Below, piece by piece: positions 9,916 through 49,420 of a stretch of DNA of 64,000 nt (positions are counted from its first letter, which is position 1; every line of letters starts with the position of its first letter). A model generated the notes under the pieces. It was not told where the DNA came from and did no database searches. It saw only the letters and a program-made list of their open reading frames with translations. The stretch lies in sequence record LR745206.1. One strand, written 5' to 3'. The position numbers were made by a program, and so were the translations under genes.

Positions 9916-10908
9916 TTATTTTTTAGATAGTTCTTTAATTCTTTTAGAACCAGCATCTTTTACACTTTTAGCAGTCTCATCTTTCAAAGCTTTTTCAACC
10001 TCTTCAATAGTTCCTAATGAGTATATGTCTTTTATTCTTTGGGACGCATGCTTTTTCCGAATAGAATTTTTCTCAACTTGATTTTTCTTGTCAATAATCT
10101 TTTCTTCTGTTCGAACATCTTCCTGTATTGGTTTGATGTTAGGGGCTCCATAAACTAATTGTTTAATTTTATCAGTTATAGTATCTTTTATAATACTTGG
10201 ATTTTTTAATATTTTATTAGTAAATTCATCAGCTAAAAACTCTATTAAACTAGTATCATATGAATCTTCCATCATCTCGATAAAATCCAATCTAGGAATT
10301 TTATCAGATATCTCAATATTTATATCAAATTTTACATTTCGTTTAACACCTTTGAACATTGTTAAAATTGGATCATCAACTGTAATTCTTTGAACTGGTG
10401 GTTCATCACGATTAACCTCAACTCTCTGAACATTGTTATCCACATCAATTGTTTGTGTTCTTTTCTGAGGAACGGGTGGTAAATCTTCTTCATCTAATAA
10501 TTTAGAAAATGCTTCATTTTGTTTTGATAGAGCATCATTATTATTATTTTCCACTCCGTATTTTCTAGCCAATTCAGCCATTTCATCTTCCTCGGTTGTC
10601 ATAATAACAGCACTTTCATTGGTTGTTGGTTGTAATCCACCACCAACATCAATAGATACAACACCATCATCATCAACTATTTGACTTGTTGGTATATTCT
10701 TGATTTTATCAGCTAATGAATTATAAGCATTTTGATTATTAAAGAATGAACTAGGATCTATTTGTTCTGTATATTGGTTAATATCTAGTAAACTACTAAC
10801 ATCCAATTTTTGCTTATTTTCTAAAATAGCAATATTTTCAAATGAATCAATTACTTTAACAGTCTCTCCTGTCTTATTGTGTTTGAAAACTTTATTCGCT
10901 AAACTCAT
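9916..10908 (-). CDS. hypothetical protein
   Basis: 330 aa ORF with natural codon usage, no recognised motif. Confidence 0.6.
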   Translation of the reverse strand: MSLANKVFKHNKTGETVKVIDSFENIAILENKQKLDVSSLLDINQYTEQIDPSSFFNNQNAYNSLADKIKNIPTSQIVDDDGVVSIDVGGGLQPTTNESAVIMTTEEDEMAELARKYGVENNNNDALSKQNEAFSKLLDEEDLPPVPQKRTQTIDVDNNVQRVEVNRDEPPVQRITVDDPILTMFKGVKRNVKFDINIEISDKIPRLDFIEMMEDSYDTSLIEFLADEFTNKILKNPSIIKDTITDKIKQLVYGAPNIKPIQEDVRTEEKIIDKKNQVEKNSIRKKHASQRIKDIYSLGTIEEVEKALKDETAKSVKDAGSKRIKELSKK

Positions 10909-10992
10909 ATTTTATTTATTATTTTTATAGCCGTCTGTATATAACTTGACTTTATCTTTATATAACCAGATTTTAAATAGTTTATAAAAAAC

Positions 10993-11027
10993 AAAAAAAT
11001 CCTATATTATTAGTATAGGATTTTTTT
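10993..11027. terminator. intrinsic terminator (bidirectional-type)
   Basis: AAAAAAATCCTATA-loop-TATAGGATTTTTTT, downstream of the SSB gene. Confidence 0.8.
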
Positions 11028-11043
11028 TATGATTTTTTATTGA

Positions 11044-12018
11044 TTATAAATCAGCGAAGAAATCATCTTCTTCTTCTGCCGCTCCTGATGTAGCTGGTTG
11101 GCTATTTGATTCCGAGAAATTATTCTCAAAGTCAAAATCATCAGATGATGGACTTGATTTAGTGTTTGAGTTAAAGCTTCCAGAAGATTTACCTGTTAAG
11201 AAGTTACTAATTTCTGTAATTTTAGCTTGTTGCTCATCGTTCAATGGTTTTGGAGAAAAGTCTTCTAAATTATGACCTCGGTCTAATAAGAATTCTTTAA
11301 TCTTGCTTTGAACTTTACCATCAATCTTACCTTCTTCATTAAGAGGAGCGTTTTTGAATTCACCCTTTTCTTTGAAATAAATAGGTAGTGATGTTGCCTC
11401 TGGTCTGAACATACTCATCTTGTAGTCAGGATAAGTTTCATCACCAGTTTGGATTTCTTTAACTACAAGAACAAAATCTTTACCAGCAGATAAGTCAAAT
11501 ACGTTACATTGAACTCCAGAAATTTCTCCATTTCTTTCTGCTGAAATTTTATCTTTAATAGTTTTACCATACTGCATAATCATTATCTGACCAACTAGTT
11601 CTGGTTGTTGTTCGTCTTCAAGAACAAGTACATAAGAGTAATACTTCTTAGAATACTTTAACATTTTTGATTTTTCAATCAAAATTGCATTCTTTGAATT
11701 TTGCATTGAGTAATAAAGATCTGTAAGAGGACATTTTTCACCAAAATTCTTTGGACTATCGAACCAACCTCTTAGTTCTTTTGGATTTTTAATATCAACA
11801 TAATGAGTTATTTTCTCAATTGCTGATTGACCCACTTTACCATCTTGAGTCAAGTTAGGTAGAAATCTAACTACTGATCTCCATCCTTTTTTCTTATCTT
11901 TCGCTTTTGAAAGATCAACACGGTAGATACCGTCATTGTTTGTTGCTTTTTGTTCATTTAAGAAGTCCATCTTTGAGTCAAGACCACCATTAAATAAATC
12001 ATCTAATTCTTCTGCCAT
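11044..12018 (-). CDS. gp32: single-stranded DNA-binding protein, T4 gp32-like
   Basis: VVRFLPN, CP, KKYYSYVLV, YGKTIKDKI, FDLSAGKDF, YPDYKMSMF, acidic tail ending DDFFADL. Confidence 0.85.
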   Translation of the reverse strand: MAEELDDLFNGGLDSKMDFLNEQKATNNDGIYRVDLSKAKDKKKGWRSVVRFLPNLTQDGKVGQSAIEKITHYVDIKNPKELRGWFDSPKNFGEKCPLTDLYYSMQNSKNAILIEKSKMLKYSKKYYSYVLVLEDEQQPELVGQIMIMQYGKTIKDKISAERNGEISGVQCNVFDLSAGKDFVLVVKEIQTGDETYPDYKMSMFRPEATSLPIYFKEKGEFKNAPLNEEGKIDGKVQSKIKEFLLDRGHNLEDFSPKPLNDEQQAKITEISNFLTGKSSGSFNSNTKSSPSSDDFDFENNFSESNSQPATSGAAEEEDDFFADL

Positions 12019-12064
12019 TATTGCCGTTTTTTTTTTAATTATTCGAGTTTTTGACTCGATATAT

Positions 12065-12092
12065 GTTATATTAATTGTGATTGATAAAGTTT
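12065..12092 (-). promoter_or_regulatory. putative phage middle promoter AAACTT-N16-TATAAC
   Basis: Same bipartite motif and spacing seen at five other sites. Confidence 0.45.
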
Positions 12093-12129
12093 AAGAAATG
12101 TTTGTTTTATTTAACTTTTTTTTCTTATC

Positions 12130-12621
12130 TTATAAGAATTTTTTCACCAACTCTTTATTATACTCCCCGTTTGGATCCGAAACGAGTTCTGATGTTATTA
12201 AATTCTGGTATTGTATATCATTAACTTTATAAAGTTTTATATCCATAATAAATAAAGGTACAAGATCACCAGTTTCTTCATCCACAAAATCCTCCTTACG
12301 TATATCACCAATTGGTCTGAATCCTGTAGCATCATAAAGCCTTTCCAAACATTCATAGAAAGTATCCATATCTTCTATATCCAATACGAAATTACTAAGA
12401 TTAATATATGGTAAACCAATTAGATTATTTGGAGCATGTCCACCCATTGATGTAGTATATCCAAATTCTTTAACACTTAATGTTGTATTGTATTGATAAT
12501 TATCAGTTATATCATAGAAAAATTCAGATATATCCAATTCACTTGGGAATCTTTTTATTTCTGAATCTGTCATATCATTAGATGTTAATTCAAACACTTT
12601 ATATTTCTTTAGATATTTCAA
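12130..12621 (-). CDS. hypothetical protein, CTS-like N-terminus
   Basis: MKYLKKYKVFE. Confidence 0.7.
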   Translation of the reverse strand: MKYLKKYKVFELTSNDMTDSEIKRFPSELDISEFFYDITDNYQYNTTLSVKEFGYTTSMGGHAPNNLIGLPYINLSNFVLDIEDMDTFYECLERLYDATGFRPIGDIRKEDFVDEETGDLVPLFIMDIKLYKVNDIQYQNLITSELVSDPNGEYNKELVKKFL

Positions 12622-13850
12622 AATTTTAATAATATTTTAACTGTATAATCATAGATATCTCTATTGTCATCAAATCTTCTATCCTCTCTACTCATGTCAA
12701 ATATGACATCATCATATTCCAATGTTGGTAATATACTCGGTAGCACTTCATCCAAATCAGATTCTAATTTTTTAAGATTCATAGTTCCTGATGTGTGTGT
12801 ATCTCTATGACCACCTATATCAATCAATACACATGGAACATACATATCTAAAATATTTATAGGACTATATTTTTGTAGTTTTTGTATAGCATATTTATGT
12901 TTAGATAAAACATCACTATTAACAACTTCATAATCCATTATGTTAAAATTAACACATTGATATTTTTTATCTGTTACATATTCTTCGGATTCATCTTGTC
13001 TAATATAAATTTCATCTTTCCAACTACCAAGTTTAAATGTTGGTGCAAGAATATCTCTTATAATTTCATTCATTATCATTAAATACCTTTTCTCATCCGT
13101 TAAATTTGAAACTGGCATTGTGCCATTATATTTTCTTTTATTTGGTTCATCAATTTTTTCATAATCACCATATATTATAGATGTTGTTACCCATTTATCT
13201 TTATCGGTTGGTATATCATCCCAGATTTCATAAAGTCTATCATTAACATAATCAATATCTACCTTTTTCATAGCTTCCCAAGCTTTTGATAAGTGTCTAT
13301 TTATTATATCAAACCAACCATCCCCAATAAAATGATCTACCCAATGCTTTATCTCTGATTGATCAAGTTTATTATCACTATTATAATGTATGTCATTATA
13401 AAAATCATAAATGCTATATTTTTGTTTAATAGATTCATTCAAATCTTTCTCATCTAATAATCTACCATAATCATCTTCTGAGTAAATTAGTAAAGATATA
13501 CCACTTGAACCAAATTCCTCATCACCATAAACATAAATAAATCTATCCAATTCCATCCAATCACCACCACTAATTTCAACATCAATACCATAACCAGCAT
13601 CTTTTCTAAAACAATATTCTTCTATTCTCTCAACAGTTTCTTTTATATCATTATATGTGAAAAACTCAGTTGAAATTTGAACATCCAATGCTTTAATAGA
13701 ATCCGTAAACATAGGTGGTGTATAATTAACTTCTTTAATATTTATATCAAACCCAGAATCAGACAATTCTAGTGTCATATCTCTTACATCCTCAATTAAA
13801 TTTGAAAAAGAGGAAGATTCAAATAATTTATATTTGGTTAAATATTTCAT
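12618..13850 (-). CDS. hypothetical protein, CTS-like N-terminus and internal LNES site
   Basis: MKYLTKYKLFES...DLNESIKQK. Confidence 0.7.
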   Translation of the reverse strand: MKYLTKYKLFESSSFSNLIEDVRDMTLELSDSGFDINIKEVNYTPPMFTDSIKALDVQISTEFFTYNDIKETVERIEEYCFRKDAGYGIDVEISGGDWMELDRFIYVYGDEEFGSSGISLLIYSEDDYGRLLDEKDLNESIKQKYSIYDFYNDIHYNSDNKLDQSEIKHWVDHFIGDGWFDIINRHLSKAWEAMKKVDIDYVNDRLYEIWDDIPTDKDKWVTTSIIYGDYEKIDEPNKRKYNGTMPVSNLTDEKRYLMIMNEIIRDILAPTFKLGSWKDEIYIRQDESEEYVTDKKYQCVNFNIMDYEVVNSDVLSKHKYAIQKLQKYSPINILDMYVPCVLIDIGGHRDTHTSGTMNLKKLESDLDEVLPSILPTLEYDDVIFDMSREDRRFDDNRDIYDYTVKILLKF

Positions 13851-14260
13851 GGTCTTATTAATAATCTTATGATACTATCATCACCATTTTCAAAAAATAT
13901 CTCTGATGGTTTATAAATAGTTTTAAATCTATCAACATCCTCTTTTAATTGATTAACTATATTATAATAACTATCAAAATCTTCCATCTTTGCTTTATCA
14001 TAAAAATCATGGTGAAAAGATAATTCAAAACCCTCAACACAAGTTAGTAATTGTCTTTGATCACATTTTGCACCCAAAAGTTTCATACCACTGAAATCAT
14101 TATGTGCCCAATCCATCTTACTATTAGGATTAAAATAAACAATATCAATAACAGTAGCTGATCCAGATTCACAAAGGTCAAATGTATGGGCAAAGAAGTT
14201 TTGCAAATCATCTTTAGATAACTCTTGATTATTTTCATTAAATCTTCTTAAATGATTCAT
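13847..14260 (-). CDS. hypothetical protein, CTS-like N-terminus
   Basis: MNHLRRFNEN. Confidence 0.7.
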   Translation of the reverse strand: MNHLRRFNENNQELSKDDLQNFFAHTFDLCESGSATVIDIVYFNPNSKMDWAHNDFSGMKLLGAKCDQRQLLTCVEGFELSFHHDFYDKAKMEDFDSYYNIVNQLKEDVDRFKTIYKPSEIFFENGDDSIIRLLIRP

Positions 14261-15573
14261 TTTTTTCTAATAACTTTTATTCTCTCAGTTTGATATTCCA
14301 TTATATCTACCTCTTGGTGTTGTTTCAATAAATCAACCATACCTTGATACATCTGAACTGTTATTCGACAATCAGTAATAGCATCGTGATATCCAGACAT
14401 ATTAATACCAAGAGCAGGTCCTATTTTTGACATTGATGATGATATTAAACCACCATCTCTTGGTGACTTACCGATAGCATCAATCATCTCTTTATATTTA
14501 ACATCACTTTCAGCTAGTTTCTGTAATAATGGTAAAAAATATAATTGTATTAGCATTTTAGTATCAAATACCTCATTTTTAATTTTATGTCCATATCTAC
14601 CAGCTAACATAGCCATATCAAAGGCAGCATTTTGTGCAATTAATAAACAAGGCTCATAATCAGAGATGAATTGAAAAAAGTCATTAATAACTTGTTCTTC
14701 ATCTTTATATTTATAACCACCAGATCCATATCTGTTAAATCCTAGAACCCATTTAGTCCTATCTTCTGGTTCGTTATATTTAGACTTTGTATCTTTTGTT
14801 AGTTTTATTTTCTCATCAAATTTACCAAGTTCGCTAAATTTATTATTATTAAAATCACACTCAGTTACTAAACATGAAACTTGTGTTAGTTGTTCATTCC
14901 TAGGACCATTTAATCCAGTAGTTTCTGTATCTAACCAAACCCAAGGCATATCAGTTTTAGAATCTAACCAAGATAGTATTTCTGGTATAGTTTTATACCA
15001 CATCTTATTTTCATTTATCGATTCTGATATCTTATTAATATCAAATTTATATTCTTTACCAATAGCATCAGAATATGTTATTTTATTTATGTTTTTAACT
15101 GTATATTTATAGTCTGGTTTAATATATTTCTTACCAGTGCCCTTTTTAACATAAGCAATTGTTAAGTGTGGTTTATAATCAGGATATTCATTTGAATTTG
15201 GTAACTCAGATAATTTATCAAACAAATATTGTAATGATCCCTTTGGTTCTACATTGAACTTAACAACATCAAATTTAGAATTCTCAAATATATCAACACC
15301 ATTAACCTCAATATCTATATCACCATCAAAGGAGTCGAATACAGACTTAACTTCTTCTATTGATACTTCCTTATGTAAACCATATAATAATGTAAGGTGT
15401 GGTCTCTTTTGTATACCATAAGTCGAATCACCATCTTCCTCATAGATATCTTCTGGATCAATCCAAGATGTAATTTCTTCCCAGTTTGAAACTGGGACAT
15501 CAATCATAACACAACCATATTTGTGTCCGTTTATAGATTCTTTTATAAATTGCTTGTATTTCTTTAATTTCAT
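14257..15573 (-). CDS. Acb1/gp57B-like 2H phosphodiesterase fused to DEDDh (DnaQ-like) exonuclease, CTS-like N-terminus
   Basis: MKLKKYKQFIKES. Two HxT motifs (RPHLTLLYG, KPHLTIAY), then LDTETTG, QNAAFD, HDAITD. Confidence 0.85.
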   Translation of the reverse strand: MKLKKYKQFIKESINGHKYGCVMIDVPVSNWEEITSWIDPEDIYEEDGDSTYGIQKRPHLTLLYGLHKEVSIEEVKSVFDSFDGDIDIEVNGVDIFENSKFDVVKFNVEPKGSLQYLFDKLSELPNSNEYPDYKPHLTIAYVKKGTGKKYIKPDYKYTVKNINKITYSDAIGKEYKFDINKISESINENKMWYKTIPEILSWLDSKTDMPWVWLDTETTGLNGPRNEQLTQVSCLVTECDFNNNKFSELGKFDEKIKLTKDTKSKYNEPEDRTKWVLGFNRYGSGGYKYKDEEQVINDFFQFISDYEPCLLIAQNAAFDMAMLAGRYGHKIKNEVFDTKMLIQLYFLPLLQKLAESDVKYKEMIDAIGKSPRDGGLISSSMSKIGPALGINMSGYHDAITDCRITVQMYQGMVDLLKQHQEVDIMEYQTERIKVIRKK

Positions 15574-15596
15574 ACTCTATATATTTTATTTCTATG

Positions 15597-15626
15597 TTGG
15601 AAATTAAAAAAGATTCCTTATATTTG
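15597..15626 (+). promoter_or_regulatory. Bacteroidota-type primary sigma promoter TTG-N19-TATATTTG
   Basis: TTG 15597..15599, TAnnTTTG 15619..15626. Confidence 0.65.
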
Positions 15627-15657
15627 TTGGAAGTCAAATAAAATAAAAACTATCAAT

Positions 15658-15819
15658 ATGGAAAGATTCTCAATGAAAGAAGTATTAAAGAATAAGTTTG
15701 GTGAGTCTGAAAAGAACATCAAAACAAGTAGATCTACAAAAAGAGCTACTAATAAAGCTTCTGATGGAAAATATATCGTTAAAATTGTTGATGGTATTAA
15801 ATACATGATATTAAAATAA
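15658..15819 (+). CDS. small basic hypothetical protein (53 aa)
   Basis: MERFSMKEVLKNKFG...YMILK. Follows a host-type promoter and abuts the next ORF. Not in the ORF track. Confidence 0.6.
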   Translation: MERFSMKEVLKNKFGESEKNIKTSRSTKRATNKASDGKYIVKIVDGIKYMILK

Positions 15820-15820
15820 T

Positions 15821-16105
15821 ATGTTTAATAAAAACAGTGTGGATAGAAATCATATTCTCACTTTTCTAAATTATAGAGAAAGGGGTGGGGTTTCAATAAC
15901 TTGTACTTGTGGTAAGGAGATTATAACATTAGATGATTTTGAAATATCTGATGGTAGAATGCACAATGACCAACATACTGTTAATATTGAACCAATCACA
16001 GGTAAATTTATCCCATTTCAACTAACCGAAGTTTACTACAATGATGTTGTTTTACATATAGCATCAATTGAAAGAAACGATAAAATCAATAAAATAATAA
16101 AATAA
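15821..16105 (+). CDS. small protein with CxC motif and C-terminal tag
   Basis: ITCTCGKE, ends ERNDKINKIIK. Confidence 0.65.
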   Translation: MFNKNSVDRNHILTFLNYRERGGVSITCTCGKEIITLDDFEISDGRMHNDQHTVNIEPITGKFIPFQLTEVYYNDVVLHIASIERNDKINKIIK

Positions 16106-16110
16106 AATAT

Positions 16111-16866
16111 ATGACAAAAGCAGATGTTTATAAAATGGTAATTGACATGCAAGTAAAAAGTGGTCAAGGATGTTCAGGAATTGTTAAATTGGGTAACGAA
16201 CCTATGGTTGGTCCTTATTTAGATGAATTGATTGAAGAAGGTCTTATAAAGGCTTGTGATACAGGTGGATCAATGGGTCACCCAGAGAGTAGAATTTTTT
16301 ATATGCCGACTAAGGGATATAATGTTTGGGAAGATGAAGATCCAAATGAATATTCTAGATTCAAGGGTAGAAATCTACACTTAGTTAGATTATATCTAGA
16401 TATTCTTCCAGAAGAACAAGGTAATAAATTTGACCTAACAAGAACTGTTATGTTAAGAGATCCTGAATGGATGAAAAAATACACCGAGTGGTTAGAAATT
16501 AACAAAGAGGAATTGGAAATTATGGTTAATCTTGATAATTTCTATGATGAACCAAATTTTGAATTCACACAAGAAGAAATTGATTATATCAAAACAAGAG
16601 GTTGGTATAAAGAAAATAAAACTATTAAAGAATGTCTTAAATCATCTAATAATTTCATTTCAGATAGAGAAGAAGTTATCTCAATTAATAAGAAACTAAT
16701 AAAACTTTATGAGTTGAAATCAGATGCTGAGAATATAGAAAATAGTAAGAAAGATATCGAAGATAATGAAAAACAAATTTTCGATAGAAAAAGAATTAAT
16801 AAGTGGTTGATGTCACAAGATGTTGATTCAAAAATACAAGATTTGTTACAAGAAGAATCTGTATAA
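16111..16866 (+). CDS. hypothetical protein
   Basis: 251 aa ORF ending before a bidirectional terminator. Confidence 0.65.
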   Translation: MTKADVYKMVIDMQVKSGQGCSGIVKLGNEPMVGPYLDELIEEGLIKACDTGGSMGHPESRIFYMPTKGYNVWEDEDPNEYSRFKGRNLHLVRLYLDILPEEQGNKFDLTRTVMLRDPEWMKKYTEWLEINKEELEIMVNLDNFYDEPNFEFTQEEIDYIKTRGWYKENKTIKECLKSSNNFISDREEVISINKKLIKLYELKSDAENIENSKKDIEDNEKQIFDRKRINKWLMSQDVDSKIQDLLQEESV

Positions 16867-26635: not shown

Positions 26636-26831
26636 AAATATTTTTAATTTTTTTCTTTCTACTACCAGACCTATCAGTCCAAACATCAGAATGGAAGGTT
26701 AATTGCATCCATTTGTTATTTTGATAAATATAATTCACACAATCAATAGTATTATAATAAATATCACCTTCTATTGGTTCTGATGGTACAGAAGTTGAAA
26801 CACTTAACTGATATTTAAATGGATCTATCAC
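26625..26831 (-). CDS. small protein with tail-fibre-like motif and C-terminal tag
   Basis: [13 protein letters not shown]...YIYQNNKW, ends [12 protein letters not shown]. Confidence 0.6.
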
Positions 26832-27910
26832 ACCTCAAAGTTTTTAGATTTTTTAAGCTTCTCAAGTAGATATTTTTCATCCATTGAAATGTTTTGTGGT
26901 ATTTTAACATTAACAACAACAAAAAGATCACCAAGACCTAAGTTTATATCAGGAATACCTTTACCTGAAACACGTATTGTCTTACCGTGTTGTGTTCCAA
27001 CATCAATAGTTATTGGTAATTCACCATGTGGTGTTCTTACTTTAAGATGAGCACCTAAAATAGCATCAACTACTGATATATCCTTTTCAACAATCAAGTT
27101 ATTACCATCTCTCTTAAAGTAAAATTCTCTTATTTCATCTATCATTATATGTAAATCACCAGGAACACCATCTCTAATATTATTTCCATAACTTCTCATA
27201 TTGAGTTGCATTCCATTAGAAACTCCTTTTGGTATATCAACCTCCACAACCTCTTCTTTAACATTAGTACCTGATCCATGGCAAACACCACATTTGTTTA
27301 ATATTTGTTTACCAGTTCCTTGACAATCACTACAATGAGCTTGTTGTCTTATTTGACCGAATGCTGTATTTTGTACAACTATTCTTTGACCAGTACCATT
27401 ACAAGGTAGACAATCCTTTACATCAGTTCCACCTTTACCAGAACAACTATTACAAGAATCTTGTCTTTTATATTTTATCTTTTTAGTAGTTCCGTTTAAT
27501 ATTTCTTCAATGGATAAAGATACTTTTATTCTTAAATCAGATCCTCTTTTCTGCCTTTTCTGTTGTCCATATTTCTGACCAAATGCACCACCAAAAACAT
27601 CACCAAACTGACTGAATATATCTTCCATATTAAACCCATGACCATATCCACCAGCACCACCATTACTAAATGGATTACCTTGTCCAAATGGACTACCACC
27701 AGTTCCGAATCTGTCATAATTCTCTCTCTTATCTTTTGAAGATAAAGTATCATAAGCCTCCGCTGCTTCCTTAAATTTAGATTCTGCTTCTGCATTATCT
27801 GGATTTTTATCTGGGTGATATTGCATTGCTTTTTTTCGATAAGCCTTTTTAATCTGTTCCTCAGATGCTTTCCTATCTACTCCTAATATGTCATAATAAT
27901 CTTTCGCCAT
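26828..27910 (-). CDS. dnaJ: chaperone DnaJ
   Basis: J-domain with HPD, G/F region, four CxxCxGxG repeats, C-terminal domain. Confidence 0.95.
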
Positions 27911-32966: not shown

Positions 32967-34290
32967 ATCTAGATGATAATCTAAATATTTTTCTCTCCCA
33001 GGTTTTAGCCTTTGAATGAAATCTATTTTCAAATACACCAAGGAAGGATTTAGGATTATTTAATGTATGTTTACTTAGTTTACTCATACCACCATCTTTA
33101 TATAGTTCATTAGTCTGATCTATATTTTTATCCCACATTTTTACTAACTCCTTTATTATAAGATGTTTAATATCAGAATTTTCCAACTCTTCCTTGGAAT
33201 AGATACCCAGTTCTAAAAAAGCATCCTTAATATCATCATCAGATGATTTATAACTAAAATTATTATAGAACTCTTCAGCATTGAAATTCTTCAAACTAAC
33301 CATTTCATCCCAAACACTATTCTGTTTAACATATTCAAAAAATTCTTGTTTGGTTTTTGGTTCTAATTCCACAAGAGAATAAAATAATTGTGATATTCTT
33401 GCATTTATTTCAAAATCTAATGATAGATAAATTAATCTTAGGAATTCTTTCCAATCATCAGAAATATTAGCTAGTACCTCTTGTTCAGCTATAAATTTAT
33501 TTGTATTTAATAATCTATCTTTCCATATACCTGATTTACTTAACTCTCTTTGATAATATTCATACATGTGTGTTAACTCATGTGATAGAAGTCCAATAAT
33601 TTTCCTACTTATACCCATTTTATCAAATAGTTTATTTATATCTTTCTTCTCCAAACTCAATATACTCTCTGGTATAAAGATATCAAAATCAAGACCAACA
33701 TTCGTATAAATACCATCCTCAACTTTAGAGTCACTATCTATAAATGCAGCATTCCAAGGATCAAACGTGAACATATTATCTGGTATTGTTGATATTTCTA
33801 AATTTATTTGTAAATTTTTAATTTTCATTTTATTATCCTTAGGTATGTGGTTTTTAATATACTTATCAAACTCACCATCTTTTACCTCTATTATCATAGA
33901 CTTTGTTTTAAAATTAACTCCACCTATTTCAGCTTGTGTATCATAAATATCAGAATTAGAAACATTTTCTTTGAAAAGATATATTTGACTAATAACAAAT
34001 GAGTATAGTAGGTCTATCCAAGGATCTATTTCATCTGGAACGCCTAATTTTTCATTCAAGACTATTGCCTTATGTTGCTTTGATGCTTTTGTATATGATA
34101 AATTAATTGCTCCTGGTAAAGGTTTTCCTATCTCACCTTCTTTATGTCCATGTACAATCTTAAACTTTTTACCTGGATGGTCTTCATGATACTTCTTTGC
34201 AGTCATTCCATTTTTCTGCATATCTTTCCATTTATCAAACCCAATACCCATTGGTACAACAAACTCATATATAGATTTTAGATATTTCAT
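32947..34290 (-). CDS. putative zinc metallopeptidase (HExxH) with CTS-like N-terminus
   Basis: MKYLKSIYEF, internal VLNEK, SHELTHMYE, downstream EINA. Confidence 0.6.
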   Translation of the reverse strand: MKYLKSIYEFVVPMGIGFDKWKDMQKNGMTAKKYHEDHPGKKFKIVHGHKEGEIGKPLPGAINLSYTKASKQHKAIVLNEKLGVPDEIDPWIDLLYSFVISQIYLFKENVSNSDIYDTQAEIGGVNFKTKSMIIEVKDGEFDKYIKNHIPKDNKMKIKNLQINLEISTIPDNMFTFDPWNAAFIDSDSKVEDGIYTNVGLDFDIFIPESILSLEKKDINKLFDKMGISRKIIGLLSHELTHMYEYYQRELSKSGIWKDRLLNTNKFIAEQEVLANISDDWKEFLRLIYLSLDFEINARISQLFYSLVELEPKTKQEFFEYVKQNSVWDEMVSLKNFNAEEFYNNFSYKSSDDDIKDAFLELGIYSKEELENSDIKHLIIKELVKMWDKNIDQTNELYKDGGMSKLSKHTLNNPKSFLGVFENRFHSKAKTWERKIFRLSSRFNLENS

Positions 34291-34877
34291 ATCTCATCAA
34301 ATCTTTTAATTTTAAATAAAGAACTAATATTATCCAATTTAGCATTTATCTCTGTTATTATCTGTTTATGAACTCTATTCATTGGTCTGTTTTTCTCAAG
34401 ATCAGATATTATATTAACAGTTTCTCTGAAATATTTATTCCTAAACCTCTCAGGTGCGGTAAAAGCATCCGATATATTTTGAAGTCTATCAGCTAATTTT
34501 ATAATAAGAGCATCTTCTGACATAAGATTCATTTTATCAATTAGATAATTTGTTTTACTTCCATCATAATCATGATCTATTTCATCACCAATAGATGTAA
34601 CTTCAATTACTAAATCAGCTACTCTTTTACCAAATCTAGATTTTATTTCTTCATATCCAACATCTTGGTCTTCATAACAATCCTCCAATACATCATGTAA
34701 TAAAGAAGCACATAATATATCTTCATCTTGATTATATCTTTTAACAATCCCATTAACCTTTTGAACATGAGCATCAAAATAAGGTTGATTTATAAATTTC
34801 CTAATCTGTTTTATATGTGCTTCTTTAGCAAAATTCCAGGCTAACTTTTCTTTATATGTTATTGGTCTGTTCGCCAT
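34287..34877 (-). CDS. HD-domain (p)ppGpp hydrolase-like protein (Mesh1/SAH family)
   Basis: PYFDAH, ASLLHDVLED, VADLVIEVT, IKLADRLQNI. Confidence 0.8.
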   Translation of the reverse strand: MANRPITYKEKLAWNFAKEAHIKQIRKFINQPYFDAHVQKVNGIVKRYNQDEDILCASLLHDVLEDCYEDQDVGYEEIKSRFGKRVADLVIEVTSIGDEIDHDYDGSKTNYLIDKMNLMSEDALIIKLADRLQNISDAFTAPERFRNKYFRETVNIISDLEKNRPMNRVHKQIITEINAKLDNISSLFKIKRFDEI

Positions 34878-35366: not shown

Positions 35367-35683
35367 TGACTAGAAAGGATATAGAATTACTAGTATCAAA
35401 TATAGGTTTAAATAATCCCGATACTCTAACAGAAGATATTTTACATATTTCTAATATGCTAGAAGGTATACAAGAATATATAATGACAAGAAAACCAACA
35501 TCAAAGTTTATGGAATTATGTGGTGATGAAAATTGGGAATATGCGTCTAGTATTGGTGATAGACTCAATAAGGAAGTTTTGGAAAAGACTCAAACATTTC
35601 AAGATTTTGTTAAAAAAATTAAAACTTCCCCTGAATATATTTGTAAAATCAGAAGTGAAAAATTAAATGTTATAGGAATATGA
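35366..35683 (+). CDS. hypothetical protein with C-terminal tag
   Basis: Ends IRSEKLNVIGI. Confidence 0.65.
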   Translation: MTRKDIELLVSNIGLNNPDTLTEDILHISNMLEGIQEYIMTRKPTSKFMELCGDENWEYASSIGDRLNKEVLEKTQTFQDFVKKIKTSPEYICKIRSEKLNVIGI

Positions 35684-36243
35684 ATTTAGTCATAATGGGA
35701 CCACCTGGAGCAGGGAAGGGAACTATTTGTAAAAGAATACTAAGTGAGTTTAAATATAAACTTATTTGTGCTGGTGATCTTCTAAGATCAGAAAAATCAT
35801 CTGGGAGTGAACTAGGTAAAAAAATAGCTTCTATTATTGATGATGGGAATCTAGTTTCTGATGAAATGATTACAAAAATTATCTTTAATGAGTTTAGAAA
35901 ACCTGTTTTACATGGAACATTCTATCTAATCGATGGATATCCAAGGACTATTAAACAAGCTAATAGTCTAGATAGAATGACAAATATAACTACCGTTATA
36001 TGGTTAGACGTTAGTGAAGAAACAACAATCAAGAGAAATTTAGAGAGGGGTAAAACATCCGGTAGACCAGATGATGCTAATGTAGAAATTATCAAACAAA
36101 GAATAAAAAACTATAATGAAGTGTCTTATCCATTGAAGAAATTTTATGGTAAAAGAATATTAGAGGTTAATGGAGAAGGTACTCCTGATGAAGTTTATAG
36201 TGATATAATTGATAAAATTATTAATCGAAATGGTAGAGTATAA
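35680..36243 (+). CDS. adk: adenylate kinase (short-LID type)
   Basis: GPPGAGKGT, GDLLR, GNLVSDE, IDGYPRT, GRPDD. Confidence 0.9.
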   Translation: MNLVIMGPPGAGKGTICKRILSEFKYKLICAGDLLRSEKSSGSELGKKIASIIDDGNLVSDEMITKIIFNEFRKPVLHGTFYLIDGYPRTIKQANSLDRMTNITTVIWLDVSEETTIKRNLERGKTSGRPDDANVEIIKQRIKNYNEVSYPLKKFYGKRILEVNGEGTPDEVYSDIIDKIINRNGRV

Positions 36244-36484: not shown

Positions 36485-37747
36485 ATGAAATTATTTAAAT
36501 ACATAGAATTTATAAATGAAAACTCAAAGAATGAGTATTCAATTCCTTCTTATGAAGAAGCTGTGGAGTTATGCTCAAAAGATGATGCTCCTTTTTATGA
36601 ATCAAAAATGATTGTTGATGGATATAATGTATCTGTCTTTAATTATAGACTTGCTCAATATAAAGATTTTGCTAATCCATTAGAACACAAACCAGAATTA
36701 AAAGGTTATGAAATGAGGGGGTTAACATTTGTATTCAATGAGGATGGTTCATTATTCAATAGATATGTTTTACTTGAGAAATTCTTTAACATAAACCAAG
36801 TTCCAGAATCAATGTATTCTATTGTTAAAAACTACAAAATAAAGTATGTTAATAATAAGGAAGATGGTTCTATTGCTTCATTTATTAAATTACCAAATGG
36901 TAAAATTGTTGGAAAGTCTAAAATGGGATTTGATAATGATCAATCAAATGGTATTAATAGAATTTATAATATAAATAAAGATGTTAAGAACTTAGTTAAT
37001 TGGTGTTTAGATAATGATATAGTTTCTATATTCGAATATGTTGCTCCTCACAATAGAATTGTTTTGAGATATACTACCGAAGACTTAATACTTTTAAGAT
37101 TAAGAAATAATAAAACTGGTAAACATATTGATATACAAGACCACTTAGATAAGATTGGTTCTATAAAGATTGCTCCTTTTGAGGATGATCACCAAGGGGA
37201 TTTAGATAAGTTGATTGAGTTGGTTGCTAAACAAATTGATAAAGAGGGTTGTATTGTACAAGCTGAGGATGCTAAAGGAAGAGATTTTTTCTTTAAGTTA
37301 AAAACTCCTTGGTACTGTGAACGACACGGTCTACTCACAGATGATATTTACAGAGAGCATATCATTATAGGATATATCCTAGATGATAAGATTGATGATA
37401 TTCTTGGTCAAATACCAGAAGAAGAGTTTGAAGCGCATGAAAGAATAAATAAGATTATACAAATAGTTAAAAAAGCTATATCTGACAAAATGACAGACAT
37501 AGAGAAATCTTATGAAGTTTTTGTCAGTATGGGTGAAAATAGAAAGGAATATGCTTTAAAATATATGGGTGTTGAACCAAACTTTGGTTATGTGATGAAT
37601 TTGGCTAATGGTAAAGATGTATATGATTTAGCTAAGGATTATATAAGAGATCATACTAAGAGGTTAATGATAGCTAGAGATTGGTTACAAGAAATTGATC
37701 CAACACTGTTTTTCCAAGACCCAGAGGAAGATGAAGAAGATAATTAA
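36485..37747 (+). CDS. rnlA: RNA ligase 1 (T4 Rnl1 family) with CTS-like N-terminus
   Basis: MKLFKYIEFINEN, YEMRGLTF, LEKFFN, NKEDGS motif I, FEYVAPHNRIVLRY, EGCIV, KLKT. Confidence 0.85.
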   Translation: MKLFKYIEFINENSKNEYSIPSYEEAVELCSKDDAPFYESKMIVDGYNVSVFNYRLAQYKDFANPLEHKPELKGYEMRGLTFVFNEDGSLFNRYVLLEKFFNINQVPESMYSIVKNYKIKYVNNKEDGSIASFIKLPNGKIVGKSKMGFDNDQSNGINRIYNINKDVKNLVNWCLDNDIVSIFEYVAPHNRIVLRYTTEDLILLRLRNNKTGKHIDIQDHLDKIGSIKIAPFEDDHQGDLDKLIELVAKQIDKEGCIVQAEDAKGRDFFFKLKTPWYCERHGLLTDDIYREHIIIGYILDDKIDDILGQIPEEEFEAHERINKIIQIVKKAISDKMTDIEKSYEVFVSMGENRKEYALKYMGVEPNFGYVMNLANGKDVYDLAKDYIRDHTKRLMIARDWLQEIDPTLFFQDPEEDEEDN

Positions 37748-39635: not shown

Positions 39636-41510
39636 ATGGCGAAAGACGTAATTATAGGAATTGACCTTGGGACCACAAATTCATGTGTTGCAGTGGTAGA
39701 AGGTGGAGAACCTATTGTAATCACAAATTCAGAGGGTAGAAGAACAACCCCATCAGTTGTCGGATTCACAGACAATGACAGAAAAATTGGAGATCCTGCT
39801 AAAAGACAAGCAGTTACTAATCCAACAAAAACAGTTTATTCGATTAAACGTTTCATTGGTAAGGACTTCTCAGTTTGTAAAGATGAAATTGGAAAGGTTC
39901 CTTATAAAGTAGTTAAAACAGGATCTAACGTACCTGGTGTTCAAATAGATGATAGAGTTTATACACCACAAGAAATATCAGCTATGATTCTACAAAAGAT
40001 GAAGAAGACAGCCGAAGAATATTTAGGACATGAAGTAACCAGAGCGGTTATTACTGTTCCAGCTTACTTTGGTGATGCTGAAAGAACTGCAACTATTGAA
40101 GCTGGTGAGATAGCTGGTTTGAAAGTTGAGAGAATTATAAATGAACCAACTGCCGCAGCTCTAGCATACGGACTAGATAAGAAAAATACAGATTCTAAGA
40201 TTCTTGTATTTGATTGTGGTGGTGGTACACATGACGTTTCTGTTTTAGAAATCGGTGATGGTGTTTTTGAAGTAAAATCTACTGATGGTGATACTCACTT
40301 AGGTGGTGATGATTTCGATAACGCAATTATTGATTGGATGGTATCAGAATTCAAATCAGACCATGATATGGATTTATCAAAAGATGCTATGGCTCTTCAA
40401 AGATTGAAGGAAGCTGGTGAGAAGGCAAAAATTGAACTATCATCTTCAACACAAACTGAGATTAATTTACCTTACATCACCGCTAAAGATGGTGTTCCTT
40501 TACACTTTGTTAAGAAATTGACAAGTGCTAAATTCGAACAAATGACTTCTAAGTTAGTAGATAGAACTATCGCTTGTGCGAAAAGTGCTCTTAAAAACGC
40601 AGGGTTAAAACCATCTGATATTGATGAAGTAATTCTTGTGGGTGGTTCTACTAGAATTCCAGCTATCCAAAATGCTATCGAGAAGTATATTGGTAAATCC
40701 CCAAATAAATCAGTAAACCCTGATGAAGTTGTTGCTCTTGGAGCCGCTATTCAAGGAGCTGTTTTATCCGGAGGAATTACAGATGTTTTACTTCTTGATG
40801 TTACACCACTTTCACTTGGTATTGAAACAATGGGGTCAGTAATGACCAGATTGATTGAGGCTAATACTACGATTCCGACCCGTAAGTCAGAAACGTTCTC
40901 AACAGCTTCAGATAATCAACCATCTGTTGAGATTCATGTTTTACAAGGTGAAAGACCAATGGCTAAAGATAACCGTTCACTAGGTAGATTCCATCTTGAT
41001 GGGATAATGCCAGCACCAAGAGGTATTCCTCAGGTTGAAGTGACATTGGATATTGATGCTAATGGTATACTTTCTGTATCCGCTAAAGATAAAGCTACTG
41101 GAAAAGAGAATAAGATTCGAATTGAAGGTGGTTCTCAATTATCTAAAGAAGAGATAGAAAGAATGAAGGCTGAGGCTGAAGCAAATTCAGAATCAGATAA
41201 ACTCGAAAGAGAAAAAGTTGACAAGGTTAATATGGCAGATAATTTAATCTTCCAAACAGAGAAACAAATGAAAGAATTTTCTGAGAAATTAACAGAAGAT
41301 GATAGGTCTTCTCTTAATTCAGACCTTGAGGAGTTGAGAAAGGCTCATTCTGAACAAGACGTTGATAAAATAGACGAAACATCTAATAAGTTAAACGAAA
41401 CTTGGTCAGCTATTAGCACTAGACTATATCAACAAACAAACGAATCAGAATCTACTGATGATGGTGATCCTGATGGTGGTGTGGAAGACACTTCTTATGA
41501 AGAAGTGTAA
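39636..41510 (+). CDS. dnaK: chaperone DnaK (Hsp70)
   Basis: [52 protein letters not shown]. Confidence 0.97.
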
Positions 41511-48034: not shown

Positions 48035-48105
48035 GAGAATGGCGATCTCATTTAGATTATCCAGGTTTATAACCCCAGGTATTTGGGGGTATCCTGATGA
48101 CTTTA
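48035..48105 (+). other. GC-rich structured intergenic element
   Basis: GAGA/TCTC hairpin, then CAGG..ACCCC/GGGGGT..CCTG extended hairpin, between prkA and yeaH. Confidence 0.35.
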
Positions 48106-48156
48106 GTATTAAGCAAAAAATTGCGTTAAGAAAATCAAAAATTAAGAAAATATTCA

Positions 48157-49419: not shown

Positions 49420-49420
49420 T

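What the first reader, a model, noticed from the sequence alone, without database searches (positions are those of the whole stretch)
14257..15573. Putatively virion-packaged Acb1-like 2H phosphodiesterase fused to a DEDDh exonuclease
Seen: CTS-like start, a 2H domain with two HLT motifs, the linker DINKISESINENK, then a DEDDh nuclease. Established: T4 Acb1 (gp57B) is a 2H phosphodiesterase that destroys CBASS cyclic oligonucleotides, and DEDDh enzymes trim short linear nucleic acids. Inference: a two-step, pre-loaded signal-destruction module (ring opening then degradation) against CBASS or type III CRISPR messengers. I do not know of this fusion being described.
Basis: partly seen in the sequence, partly recalled or inferred. 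Interest (0 to 1): 0.8.

Follow-up and report, generated by a model that had tools for sequence, protein, structure and literature searches.

The report
Megaphage 2H phosphodiesterase–exonuclease fusion with leader
A giant bacteriophage encodes one protein that joins an intact RNA/nucleotide phosphodiesterase to an intact 3'-5' exonuclease behind a short N-terminal tag shared by dozens of its other genes; the enzyme pair probably counters host defence or repairs RNA, but it is not a true Acb1, and virion packaging is only a plausible guess.

Summary
ORF 14257-15573 (-) encodes 438 aa with four parts: a 13-aa leader, a 2H phosphoesterase (H59-L-T61, H136-L-T138), the disordered linker DINKISESINENK, and a DEDDh exonuclease (D215, E217, D319, H396, D401). 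All catalytic residues are invariant in 35 homologues.

The window is part of the 634,780-bp uncultured megaphage LR745206.1.

"Acb1-like" holds only loosely. The best Pfam match is the generic 2_5_RNA_ligase2 family, and Acb1 falls below its cut-off. The closest fold is Maribacter phage Colly_1 gp180, not Acb1.

The fusion is not rare. Hundreds of metagenomic clusters carry it, and relatives show 2H alone, exonuclease alone, or both with an extra module between them. A 2025 preprint table lists a huge-phage 2H enzyme with a comparable extra nuclease domain.

The serial "ring opening then degradation" model is chemically doubtful, because Acb1 products end in a 3'-phosphate.

The "CTS-like start" is a real lead. 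At least 43 of about 907 genes share the leader, which ends in hydrophobic-x-Glu, and the phage has a T4-type head module. Packaging remains untested.

RNA-end repair is a strong rival explanation.

The parts
14257..15573 (-). Whole ORF, 438 aa plus stop: leader, 2H phosphoesterase, linker, DEDDh exonuclease
15535..15573 (-). N-terminal leader MKLKKYKQFIKES (aa 1-13). It lies outside the 2H fold and ends in I-K-E|S.
   Evidence: pLDDT is below 50 for aa 1-15. The closest cultured homologue, Colly_1 gp180, lacks it. The leader family has 43 strict and about 68 loose members genome-wide.
15040..15522 (-). 2H phosphoesterase domain (about aa 18-178)
   Evidence: PF13563 above its cut-off. AF2 model with pLDDT about 85-95. 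Foldseek matches to LigT, phage PDE-9, Acb1 and Colly_1 gp180.
15391..15399 (-). First HxT motif, H59-L-T61
   Evidence: Read from the sequence; invariant in alignments A1 and A2.
15160..15168 (-). Second HxT motif, H136-L-T138
   Evidence: Read from the sequence; invariant in alignments A1 and A2.
15004..15042 (-). Inter-domain linker DINKISESINENK (aa 178-190). It carries two hydrophobic-x-Glu motifs, I-S-E|S and I-N-E|N.
   Evidence: pLDDT is below 50 for aa 181-190. E188, K190 and M191 are invariant. Stand-alone exonucleases carry the same ...(I/L)NE|NKMWYK as the end of their own leader.
14260..15003 (-). DEDDh (DnaQ/RNase T-like) 3'-5' exonuclease domain (aa 191-438)
   Evidence: PF00929 above its cut-off. 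phrog_192 at E 6e-11. Best Foldseek match is RNase T, E 1e-6, TM 0.60-0.65.
14923..14931 (-). Exo I motif, D215-T-E217
14617..14619 (-). Exo II aspartate, D319 (in NAAFD)
14371..14388 (-). Exo III motif, H396-x4-D401 (the 'h' of DEDDh)

Best explanation
This is an intact gene of a ~635-kb T4-related megaphage. It encodes two independent enzymes on one chain.

Shown:
- A metal-independent 2H phosphoesterase with a complete HxT/HxT tetrad.
- A two-metal DEDDh 3'-5' exonuclease with an RNase T/DnaQ-like fold.
- A disordered linker between them and a 13-aa leader in front.

Inferred: the protein is an accessory counter-defence enzyme that removes short RNA-like signalling molecules.
- The 2H module cuts 3'-5' or 2'-5' phosphodiester bonds, or 2',3'-cyclic phosphates, in cyclic or linear oligonucleotide messengers from CBASS, type III CRISPR or related systems.
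- The exonuclease removes nucleotides from species that have a free 3'-OH, such as linear precursors or intermediates of nucleotidyltransferases, linear oligonucleotides and nanoRNAs.
- The two modules most likely act in parallel on different species. An obligatory 'open the ring, then chew it' pipeline is less likely. It would work only if this 2H leaves a 2'-phosphate/3'-OH end, as LigT-type enzymes do, rather than the 3'-phosphate that Acb1 leaves.

Delivery is a separate claim of lower confidence. The leader may be a T4-style capsid-targeting and cleavage tag.
For: Active sites and folds:
- All catalytic residues are intact and invariant.
- Both Pfam domains pass their curated cut-offs.
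- The AF2 models are confident: pLDDT 84.5 for the whole protein and 84.9 for the 2H domain alone.

Links to anti-signalling enzymes:
- The top PDB fold match of the 2H domain is phage BCSR5 PDE-9 (9q2y). This enzyme degrades cGAMP and shares a structural group with T4 Acb1 (bioRxiv 10.1101/2025.08.21.671373).
- All 39 stand-alone homologues also hit Pfam Acb1, with a best E-value of 2e-9.
- Viral 2H PDEs of several structural groups cleave CBASS and type III CRISPR messengers.
- 2H domains of phage polyvalent proteins were predicted to destroy nucleotide signals (PMC5512222).
- A DEDDh exonuclease has been shown to block cGAS-type signalling by degrading the released linear dinucleotide intermediate (bioRxiv 10.1101/2025.03.04.641389).

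Linkage of the two modules:
- Fusion recurs and the module order is conserved in relatives: 2H, then an optional unknown module, then the exonuclease.
- In one relative the two are separate genes at the same locus.

Genomic context:
- The window also carries an HD_4 alarmone-type phosphodiesterase.
- The gene sits among fast-evolving ORFans that carry the leader.
Against: - There is no biochemical evidence for this protein or any close homologue. The nearest cultured relative, Colly_1 gp180, was assayed as 2H PDE-11, but its result appears only in a figure I could not read.
- Two of the seven viral 2H structural groups that Doherty et al. tested cleaved none of the tested messengers.
- Sequence and fold do not separate this domain from LigT-type RNA 2',3'-cyclic phosphodiesterases.
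- The exonuclease is facultative at this locus.
- In one relative an RNA ligase lies next to the 2H operon. The window itself holds an Rnl1-type ligase and an RlaP nucleotidyltransferase. Both favour RNA repair.
- The gene lies in a ribonucleotide-reductase-to-gp32 block.
- The host and its defence systems are unknown (PMC9723777).
Confidence: 0.38

Rival explanations
1. RNA end-healing and trimming (tRNA/RNA repair). The 2H module acts as a LigT/Trl1-type 2',3'-cyclic phosphodiesterase. It opens the >p ends left by host anticodon nucleases or other metal-independent RNases. The RNase T-like exonuclease then trims the damaged 3' end so that a ligase or a nucleotidyltransferase can restore the RNA.
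For: - The best sequence-profile match among solved structures is the Pyrococcus LigT-like protein (E 4.5e-5), against 0.073 for Acb1.
- The best NCBIfam match is RNA 2',3'-cyclic phosphodiesterase, although far below its cut-off.
- E. coli LigT ranks 2nd to 7th among fold matches.
- The exonuclease's best fold match is RNase T, a tRNA 3'-end trimming enzyme.
- The window carries an Rnl1-type RNA ligase (36485-37747) and an RlaP RNA-repair nucleotidyltransferase (60433-61569).
- The genome has about 59 tRNA genes.
- In a 481-kb relative, an RNA ligase (PF09414) lies divergently next to the 2H operon.
- Jumbo-phage 2H enzymes were proposed to clear cyclic ends for ligases (PMC7824862).
- A 2'-phosphate/3'-OH product would be a more plausible substrate for a DEDDh enzyme than a 3'-phosphate product (inference).
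Against: - The ligase and RlaP in the window lie 21 kb and 45 kb away and are not in the same operon.
- Ligase adjacency was seen in only 1 of 6 related gene arrangements.
- No polynucleotide kinase or phosphatase was found nearby; the kinase at 35680-36243 is an adenylate kinase.
- Iyer et al. 2017 noted that phage polyvalent-type 2H domains are not associated with ligases.
Confidence: 0.3
2. Nucleic-acid scavenging. The exonuclease, like T4 DexA, and the 2H module acting as a Usb1-like RNase degrade host RNA or DNA fragments to mononucleotides for phage replication.
For: - The gene lies between ribonucleotide reductase and gp32 in all relatives examined.
- Human Usb1 is among the fold matches.
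- The exonuclease matches generic DnaQ/RNase T models.
Against: - Nothing is specific to this reading.
- The exonuclease is dispensable in relatives.
- The leader and the ORFan context fit accessory or conflict genes better.
Confidence: 0.1
3. The exonuclease is a DnaQ-like proofreading subunit of the replisome and became fused by chance to an unrelated 2H gene.
For: - phrog_192 'DNA polymerase exonuclease subunit' at E 6e-11 and phrog_17 'DNA polymerase'.
- A match to the PolC exonuclease domain, 2p1j.
- gp32 lies in the same gene string.
Against: - The exonuclease is absent from this locus in several relatives.
- In the sister megaphage it sits among leader-bearing ORFans next to a methyltransferase.
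- Fusion to the 2H domain, or to the unknown middle module, recurs.
- RNase T is the best fold match.
Confidence: 0.07
4. The leader is not a capsid-targeting signal. It is some other shared N-terminal element, for example a recognition tag for the phage's own DnaK/DnaJ chaperones or the first helix of a large paralogous family. In that case the protein acts only in the cytoplasm after synthesis.
For: - The phage encodes DnaK and DnaJ in this window.
- The leader has hydrophobic residues flanked by lysines.
- Leader proteins are acidic (19% D+E), unlike the basic T4 internal proteins.
- The gene lies in a replication and nucleotide-metabolism block.
- The match to the T4-type protease family is below its cut-off: Pfam S77 at 16.8 bits against 27.
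Against: - The leader is conserved at the amino-acid level while synonymous codons vary.
- It sits on otherwise unrelated proteins.
- The first Glu falls at position 8-12 in 41 of 43 leaders and is followed by Ser or Asn in 28 of 43.
- The same hydrophobic-x-E-(N/S/H) motif occurs 22 times in the protease-scaffold protein, where 2 are expected.
Confidence: 0.55

Closest known systems
Maribacter phage Colly_1 gp180 (YP_010357429; '2H PDE-11' of Doherty et al. 2025, bioRxiv 10.1101/2025.08.21.671373)
   Same: It is the closest cultured-phage relative of the 2H domain: 37% identity over aa 10-151, and Foldseek TM 0.81, rmsd 2.5 A, E 8e-12. It has the same HxT/HxT core.
   Different: It is a stand-alone protein of about 174 aa with no leader (it starts MSDSKNNRRFGCLM) and no exonuclease. 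Its substrate profile appears only in a figure not available to me.
T4 Acb1 (gp57B) and phage FBB1 Acb1 (PDB 7T26/7T27)
   Same: It belongs to the 2H superfamily, has the HxT/HxT tetrad, and is phage-encoded. Its Pfam Acb1 model is the second-best Pfam hit.
   Different: - The Pfam score is below the curated cut-off.
- The fold match is no better than to E. coli LigT (TM about 0.55, ranks 8 and 16; Acb1-named models rank 31 or lower).
- The Acb1 C-terminal lid is replaced here by a linker and a second enzyme.
- The Acb1 product carries a 3'-phosphate.
E. coli LigT/ThpR and archaeal LigT-like PH0099 (RNA 2',3'-cyclic phosphodiesterases)
   Same: These give the best sequence-profile match among solved structures and top-ranking fold matches.
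   Different: TIGR02258 scores 27 bits against a cut-off of 65.7. The cellular enzymes have no leader and no fused exonuclease.
RNase T and the DnaQ/PolC proofreading domains (DEDDh exonucleases)
   Same: The DEDDh motifs and the fold match: RNase T at E 1e-6, TM 0.60-0.65. PF00929 is above its cut-off.
   Different: - Identity is only 15-18%.
- Two insertions are present (about aa 255-295 and 355-390).
- No curated NCBIfam family is reached.
- Oligomeric state and substrate are unknown.
CBASS-associated DEDDh 'Exo' (bioRxiv 10.1101/2025.03.04.641389)
   Same: It is a DEDDh enzyme whose substrate is a short linear intermediate of a cGAS-like nucleotidyltransferase. This sets a precedent for a DEDDh enzyme acting on immune nucleotide signalling.
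   Different: It is host-encoded and specific for 2'-5' linkages. I did not test sequence relatedness to the megaphage domain.
T4 internal proteins with the capsid-targeting sequence MKTYQEFIAE
   Same: - Both have a short conserved N-terminal leader on otherwise unrelated, fast-evolving accessory proteins.
- The pattern is MK..Y..FI.E, ending in hydrophobic-x-Glu.
- Both phages have a T4-type portal, gp23 capsid protein and a candidate S77 protease.
   Different: - The leader here is longer and more lysine-rich.
- It is carried by about 5-8% of all genes.
- The cargo proteins are acidic.
- Neither cleavage nor packaging has been shown.
Phage polyvalent proteins (Iyer, Burroughs, Anand, de Souza, Aravind 2017, PMC5512222)
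   Same: Several conflict-related enzyme domains, including 2H, are joined on one chain and proposed to be processed into units and delivered at infection.
   Different: This protein has only two catalytic domains, no MuF, portal or peptidase domain, and is not encoded among virion genes.

Membership tests
2H phosphoesterase superfamily | Two H-x-T/S motifs forming the catalytic tetrad | tested here: met
   H59-L-T61 and H136-L-T138 are present. They are invariant in 35 and 39 homologues.
2H phosphoesterase superfamily | Significant match to a curated 2H family model, and the 2H fold | tested here: met
   PF13563 scores 34.3-37 bits against a cut-off of 27. Foldseek gives probability 1.0 to LigT, PDE-9, Acb1, CPDase, Usb1 and VP3.
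Acb1 (anti-CBASS protein 1, PF23474) | Score above Pfam's curated cut-off for the Acb1 family | tested here: not met
   The score is 23.1 bits for the whole protein and 25.8 bits for the domain alone, against a cut-off of 27. The generic PF13563 model scores higher.
Acb1 (anti-CBASS protein 1, PF23474) | Acb1 structures are the closest structural neighbours | tested here: not met
   In the PDB search, 7T27 ranks 8th and 7T26 ranks 16th, no better than E. coli LigT. In BFVD, Acb1-named models rank 31st or lower, while Colly_1 gp180 ranks 1st.
Acb1 (anti-CBASS protein 1, PF23474) | Short C-terminal lid that closes over the ligand | tested here: inconclusive
   The 2H domain runs straight into a disordered linker and the exonuclease. 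Whether the linker can act as a lid cannot be told from the model.
Acb1 (anti-CBASS protein 1, PF23474) | Hydrolysis of 3'3'-cGAMP, cA3 and similar messengers, and rescue from CBASS | not testable with these tools
   This needs a biochemical or phage-infection assay.
LigT/ThpR RNA 2',3'-cyclic phosphodiesterase (TIGR02258) | Score above the curated equivalog cut-off | tested here: not met
   27 bits against a cut-off of 65.7.
DEDDh (DnaQ-like) 3'-5' exonuclease superfamily | Exo I (DxE), Exo II (D) and Exo III (H-x4-D) motifs | tested here: met
   D215, E217, D319, H396 and D401 are all invariant.
DEDDh (DnaQ-like) 3'-5' exonuclease superfamily | Curated family model and fold | tested here: met
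   PF00929 scores 31.8 bits against a cut-off of 24. RNase T is the best fold match at E 1e-6.
Oligoribonuclease (Orn/REXO2) and DNA polymerase III epsilon equivalogs | Score above the curated NCBIfam cut-offs | tested here: not met
   Oligoribonuclease scores 18.5 against 106, dnaQ 24-26 against 71.5, and epsilon about 20 against 196-223.
T4-type capsid-targeted internal proteins | A conserved ~10-aa N-terminal leader shared by otherwise unrelated proteins of the phage | tested here: met
   43 of 907 genes match the strict pattern at the N-terminus, against 5 of 3662 internal Met positions and 0 of 300 rejected ORFs. About 68 genes match a looser pattern. Synonymous codons vary within the leader.
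T4-type capsid-targeted internal proteins | The leader ends in a hydrophobic-x-Glu site of the kind the prohead protease cleaves | tested here: met
   At sequence level only. The first Glu lies at position 8-12 in 41 of 43 leaders. The residue two before the Glu is F, L, I or Y in 32 of 43. The residue after the Glu is S or N in 28 of 43. The target has I-K-E|S.
T4-type capsid-targeted internal proteins | The phage encodes a T4-type (S77/gp21) prohead protease and a scaffold core | tested here: inconclusive
   The ORF L010:2546-4669 lies between the portal and the gp23-like capsid gene. Pfam S77 gives E 0.005 (16.8 bits against a cut-off of 27), and tblastn with T4 gp21 gives E 0.5. It is followed by scaffold-like 14-aa repeats.
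T4-type capsid-targeted internal proteins | The protein is present in virions with its leader removed | not testable with these tools
   The phage is uncultured and no proteome is available.
Phage polyvalent proteins (Iyer et al. 2017) | Many-domain protein fused to, or encoded beside, MuF, portal or other virion genes, often with a processing peptidase | tested here: not met
   The protein has two catalytic domains only. Its neighbours are ORFans and gp32, and the head module lies about 250 kb away.

The most novel reading that the evidence does not exclude
The leader is a capsid-targeting and cleavage tag, and this megaphage loads dozens of different accessory proteins (43-70 genes, about 5-8% of its coding capacity) into its giant head.

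On this reading the 2H-exonuclease protein is a small polyprotein. The T4-type prohead protease would cut after E12 and within the linker (I-S-E184|S, I-N-E188|N). That would release separate 2H and exonuclease enzymes, which are injected with the DNA to disarm nucleotide-based defences before any phage gene is expressed.

Two observations would be signatures of this system:
- Every module boundary in relatives (2H, the unknown middle module, exonuclease) keeps a hydrophobic-x-E-(S/N) junction.
- The protease-scaffold protein repeats the same motif every 14 residues.
Probability: 0.25. Interest if true: 0.8.

Novelty: new variant of a known kind. Interest (0 to 1): 0.5.

Why it matters
Phage 2H phosphodiesterases are an active topic in immune evasion (Acb1, the poxvirus cGAMP PDEs, and the 2025 virome survey). 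A widespread, uncharacterised lineage in which a 2H enzyme is repeatedly joined to a 3'-5' exonuclease offers a direct test of two questions:
- Do phages attack nucleotide signalling at more than one chemical step?
- Alternatively, do phages couple cyclic-phosphate opening to 3'-end trimming in RNA repair?

The leader may matter more. If it is a targeting tag, it would give a sequence-based way to read the injected proteome of uncultured megaphages, for which no virion data exist. It would also give a simple rule for finding their counter-defence cargo.

Tried and rejected
- Sigma-70 promoter and terminator scan of 10900-16200: 35 promoter-like sites against 40 expected, so it says nothing about timing or operon structure.
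- Single-sequence search against PDB: only marginal hits.
- NCBIfam: no family reaches its cut-off.
- tblastn with T4 RnlB against the genome: no credible Rnl2-type ligase.
- Second copies of either domain in the genome: none, only two further leaders of the same subtype.
- Substrate result for 2H PDE-11 (Colly_1 gp180): it is only in figures, not in the text or tables held.
- Virion proteomics paper for Tenacibaculum phage PTm1, whose 2H protein is a fold neighbour: not in the library.
- Conservation of the leader at nucleotide level (a translation or recombination signal): rejected as the main cause, because synonymous codons vary at every leader position.
- The N-terminal segment as a 2H-specific 'lid', as in PDE-9: rejected, because the same leader is found on dozens of unrelated proteins and is missing from Colly_1 gp180.
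- Whether the T4 gp23 cleavage site aligns with the SINE|N of the megaphage capsid protein: only residues 6-22 versus 8-24 align (E 0.059), so no conclusion.
Full report
**Source of the window.** The window matches the uncultured megaphage LR745206.1 (634,780 bp). The target ORF maps at 100% identity to record positions 448260-449573, which places the window at record 434001-498000. Merging the window with the neighbouring record pieces gave no mismatches in the overlaps. Window GC is 28.5%. According to PMC9723777, the record comes from a subsurface sample in Japan. It clusters by terminase with the largest known phages, and no host could be predicted for its marine relative Mar_Mega_1.

ORF 14257-15573 (-) is open and encodes 438 aa. 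Read from the DNA, it contains:
- the start MKLKKYKQFIKES;
- H59-L-T61 (15391-15399) and H136-L-T138 (15160-15168);
- the linker DINKISESINENK (aa 178-190);
- the DEDDh residues D215/E217 (14923-14931), D319 (14617-14619) and H396...D401 (14371-14388).

Pfam places aa 30-146 in 2_5_RNA_ligase2 (34.3 bits, cut-off 27) and aa 212-409 in RNase_T (31.8 bits, cut-off 24). PHROGs gives 'DNA polymerase exonuclease subunit' and 'RNA ligase'. In 35 full-length homologues of 53-95% identity, all nine catalytic residues are invariant.

An AlphaFold2 model has mean pLDDT 84.5. Only aa 1-15 and 181-190 fall below 50, so the leader and the linker are flexible and two compact domains lie between them.

**What kind of 2H domain is it?**
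- Pfam Acb1 scores 23.1 bits on the whole protein and 25.8 on the domain alone. Both are below the cut-off of 27 and below the generic 2H family.
- All 39 stand-alone homologues hit both models: 2_5_RNA_ligase2 with a best E-value of 1.7e-12 and Acb1 with 2.1e-9.
- A profile of the family finds archaeal LigT-like PH0099 (E 4.5e-5) ahead of Acb1 (E 0.073) among solved structures.
- Foldseek with the domain-only model (pLDDT 84.9) gives a flat ranking. Phage BCSR5 PDE-9 scores 7e-6, E. coli LigT 9e-6, and Acb1 7T27 1.8e-5. D. radiodurans CPDase, Usb1 and rotavirus VP3 follow, all with TM about 0.5-0.6.
- Among predicted viral structures there is a clear nearest neighbour, Maribacter phage Colly_1 gp180 (TM 0.81, rmsd 2.5 A, E 8e-12). 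Other phage 2H proteins follow, including Tenacibaculum phage PTm1. Acb1-named models begin at rank 31.

The domain therefore belongs to a separate viral 2H lineage. 'Acb1-like' describes the superfamily and possibly the role, but not family membership.

Colly_1 gp180 is '2H PDE-11' in Doherty et al. 2025 (bioRxiv 10.1101/2025.08.21.671373). It was purified and tested on 14-18 messengers, but the outcome is only in figures I cannot read. That study shows that viral 2H groups differ sharply in substrate range and that two groups cleaved nothing in the panel.

**The exonuclease.** The best fold matches are E. coli and Pseudomonas RNase T (E about 1e-6, TM 0.60-0.65), followed by CRN-4. Sequence models give only generic DnaQ, PolC-exonuclease and oligoribonuclease similarity, far below curated cut-offs. 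It is a bona fide DEDDh enzyme of unassigned subfamily.

**The fusion is common and facultative.** The full-length search found 644 relatives. Many are about 437 aa with both domains, on contigs up to 215 kb. JGI names them '2'-5' RNA ligase/DNA polymerase III epsilon subunit-like protein'.

The domain-only search found 456 relatives, mostly stand-alone 2H proteins of 177-183 aa, on contigs up to 481 kb.

I sorted the 240 retrieved proteins by module markers. Call the 2H module A, the exonuclease C, and an unknown ~120-aa module (YDSEWK...IYIHFDK) B. The architectures found are A, A-C, A-B-C, A-B, B-C and C, always in that order.

Gene neighbourhoods are syntenic: ribonucleotide reductase small subunit, then small ORFans, then the 2H gene (with or without B and C), then 2-8 ORFans, then gp32.
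- The exonuclease is fused in some relatives.
- In one it is a separate gene, one gene away.
- In others it is absent from the locus.
- In the sister megaphage LR756502.1 it stands alone next to a methyltransferase.

Doherty et al.'s Supplementary Table 2 lists a huge-phage 2H PDE (Ig8144_scaffold_2...00293) with an added domain matching CATH 2qxfA01, labelled 'ribonuclease'. From memory, 2QXF is E. coli exonuclease I. This may be the same protein, but I could not confirm the identity.

The architecture has therefore been noticed by automated annotation and in one supplementary table. I found no functional description.

**Mechanism.** T4 Acb1 converts 3'3'-cGAMP through a cyclic-phosphate intermediate to G[3'-5']pAp[3'], which has a 3'-phosphate end (PMC9117128). 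From general knowledge, DEDDh exonucleases act on 3'-OH ends. Linearisation alone also already inactivates the signal.

Two better-fitting readings remain.

(a) Parallel attack on nucleotide signalling. The 2H domain acts on cyclic products, and the exonuclease acts on linear species with a 3'-OH. There is a direct precedent: a CBASS-associated DEDDh 'Exo' suppresses cGAS-type signalling by degrading the released linear pppA[2'-5']pG intermediate (bioRxiv 10.1101/2025.03.04.641389). Iyer et al. 2017 also predicted that phage 2H domains destroy defence nucleotides (PMC5512222).

(b) RNA end repair. A LigT-type 2H leaves a 2'-phosphate with a free 3'-OH, according to my recollection of the E. 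coli ThpR work (PMC4201822, listed). An RNase T-like enzyme could plausibly excise such an end. Supporting context:
- The window contains an Rnl1-type RNA ligase (36485-37747) and an RlaP nucleotidyltransferase (60433-61569).
- The genome has about 59 tRNA genes.
- One relative has an RNA ligase beside the 2H operon.
- Iyer et al. 2021 assign jumbo-phage 2H enzymes partly to this role (PMC7824862).

I rank (a) slightly above (b), at 0.38 against 0.30. Three points favour (a):
- the gene is an accessory gene among ORFans;
- the top PDB fold match is a proven anti-CBASS phosphodiesterase;
- ligase linkage is weak (1 of 6 related gene arrangements).

The tools cannot separate the two readings.

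**The leader.**
- The start is not part of the 2H fold. It is disordered in the model, and Colly_1 gp180 begins MSDSKNNRRFGCLM and lacks it.
- In the window, 18 ORFs begin M[KN][HY]L[KR]x[FY]..E[SN] or a close variant.
- Over the whole genome, 43 of about 907 predicted genes match a strict pattern at the N-terminus, against 5 of 3662 internal methionines and 0 of 300 discarded ORFs. Four of those five internal matches are probably true starts preceded by an upstream ATG.
- A looser pattern that includes the target's subtype (M.LKKY..FIKES) matches 68 genes.
- Synonymous codons vary at each leader position, so selection acts on the peptide.
- The first Glu lies at position 8-12 in 41 of 43 leaders, against 225 of 864 other genes. 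It is preceded two residues earlier by F, L, I or Y in 32 of 43 and followed by Ser or Asn in 28 of 43.
- All ten leader-bearing window ORFs that I scanned lack any Pfam domain. None of the recognisable housekeeping genes of the window read at their starts (gp32) or hit by the leader searches carries it; these include gp32, DnaK, DnaJ, PrkA, topoisomerase and the ligase.

This is the pattern known from T4, where unrelated internal proteins share the capsid-targeting sequence MKTYQEFIAE and are cut once after it by the prohead protease (bioRxiv 10.1101/2021.01.19.427310; PMC3012670). The target's MKLKKYKQFIKE resembles that sequence.

The megaphage has a T4-type head module:
- portal (tblastn with T4 gp20, E 1e-20);
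- terminase (E 7e-44);
- gp23-like capsid protein (Pfam E 1.8e-26);
- between portal and capsid gene, a 707-aa ORF whose N-terminus weakly matches the gp21/S77 protease (Pfam E 0.005, below its cut-off; tblastn E 0.5). The rest of this ORF consists of 14-residue repeats, YSEY(L/I)AENLDKNI.

That protein carries 22 [LIV]xE[NSH] sites where about 2 are expected. Every module junction in the 2H/B/exonuclease family has the same motif, for example ...INE|SIEY......IKE|NKMWYK... and the target's ISE|S-INE|N. In unfused relatives, that motif is simply the end of each gene's own leader.

Together this makes a capsid-targeting and cleavage reading plausible, and it suggests the fusion may be cut into two enzymes. 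Evidence against this reading:
- the protease match is sub-threshold;
- leader proteins are acidic, not basic;
- the gene is far from the head genes;
- there is no proteomic evidence;
- a chaperone tag or a paralogous N-terminal helix is not excluded.

**Verdict.** The protein is a new variant built from two well-known enzyme kinds. It is widespread in uncultured large phages and functionally untested. The most interesting lead is the genome-wide leader with its protease-like junction motif.

Noticed in passing
Window ORF starts, by strand. Minus strand: 6869, 12621 (TTG start), 13850, 14260, 17175, 17396, 17902, 18537, 22842, 23492, 24342, 25400, 45412, 58349. Plus strand: 37784, 38675.: A conserved N-terminal leader, M[KN][HY]L[KR]x[FY]..E[SN], sits on otherwise unrelated ORFan proteins. 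There are 43 strict and about 68 loose matches in the 635-kb genome, and the window holds 15 of the 43. It resembles the T4 capsid-targeting sequence.
   Followed up: partly
L010:2546-4669 (+), record LR745206.1 198546-200669, outside the window: A 707-aa ORF lies between the portal and the gp23-like capsid gene. It has a weak gp21/S77-protease-like N-terminus, then about 12 tandem 14-residue repeats (YSEYLAENLDKNI) and an acidic tail. It looks like a protease-scaffold fusion and carries 22 [LIV]xE[NSH] motifs where about 2 are expected.
   Followed up: partly
Relatives P0044, P0107, P0114 and P0138 (module B); no counterpart identified in the window: An unknown ~120-aa module (YDSEWKLP...IYIHFDK) is inserted between the 2H and exonuclease domains in many relatives. 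It also occurs fused to only one of them. It has no family assignment.
   Followed up: no
window 36485-37747 (+) and 60433-61569 (+): An Rnl1-type RNA ligase (PF09511, E 8e-21) and an RlaP RNA-repair nucleotidyltransferase (PF10127, E 2e-20) are present, so the phage has RNA-repair capacity. No polynucleotide kinase was found next to them.
   Followed up: partly
window 34287-34877 (-) and 35680-36243 (+): An HD_4 domain protein, of the alarmone/(p)ppGpp-hydrolase type of HD phosphodiesterase, and an adenylate kinase. The HD_4 protein is another candidate counter-nucleotide enzyme.
   Followed up: no
window 46112-50920 (+): A complete PrkA / DUF444 / SpoVR gene trio, the bacterial YeaG-YeaH-YcgB stress module, is encoded by the phage with very strong Pfam scores (E 1e-147 to 1e-169).
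   Followed up: no
window 39636-41510 (+) and 26828-27910 (-): Phage-encoded DnaK (Hsp70, E 3e-250) and DnaJ chaperones.
   Followed up: no
L010:6508-6897 (+), just after the capsid gene, outside the window: A 129-aa protein with an NFACT-R RNA-binding domain (E 1.5e-16). It starts with a leader-like MIKKYKLFKEG.
   Followed up: no
L019:4411-4971 (+), sister megaphage LR756502.1: A protein with a SAM-methyltransferase-like motif carries the same type of leader (MIIKRYNEFVFE) and lies directly upstream of the stand-alone exonuclease. This shows that several enzyme types carry the tag.
   Followed up: no
Whole genome LR745206.1, clusters at 342-344, 365-369, 388-390 and 407-408 kb: About 59 tRNA genes by ARAGORN, none inside the window.
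   Followed up: no
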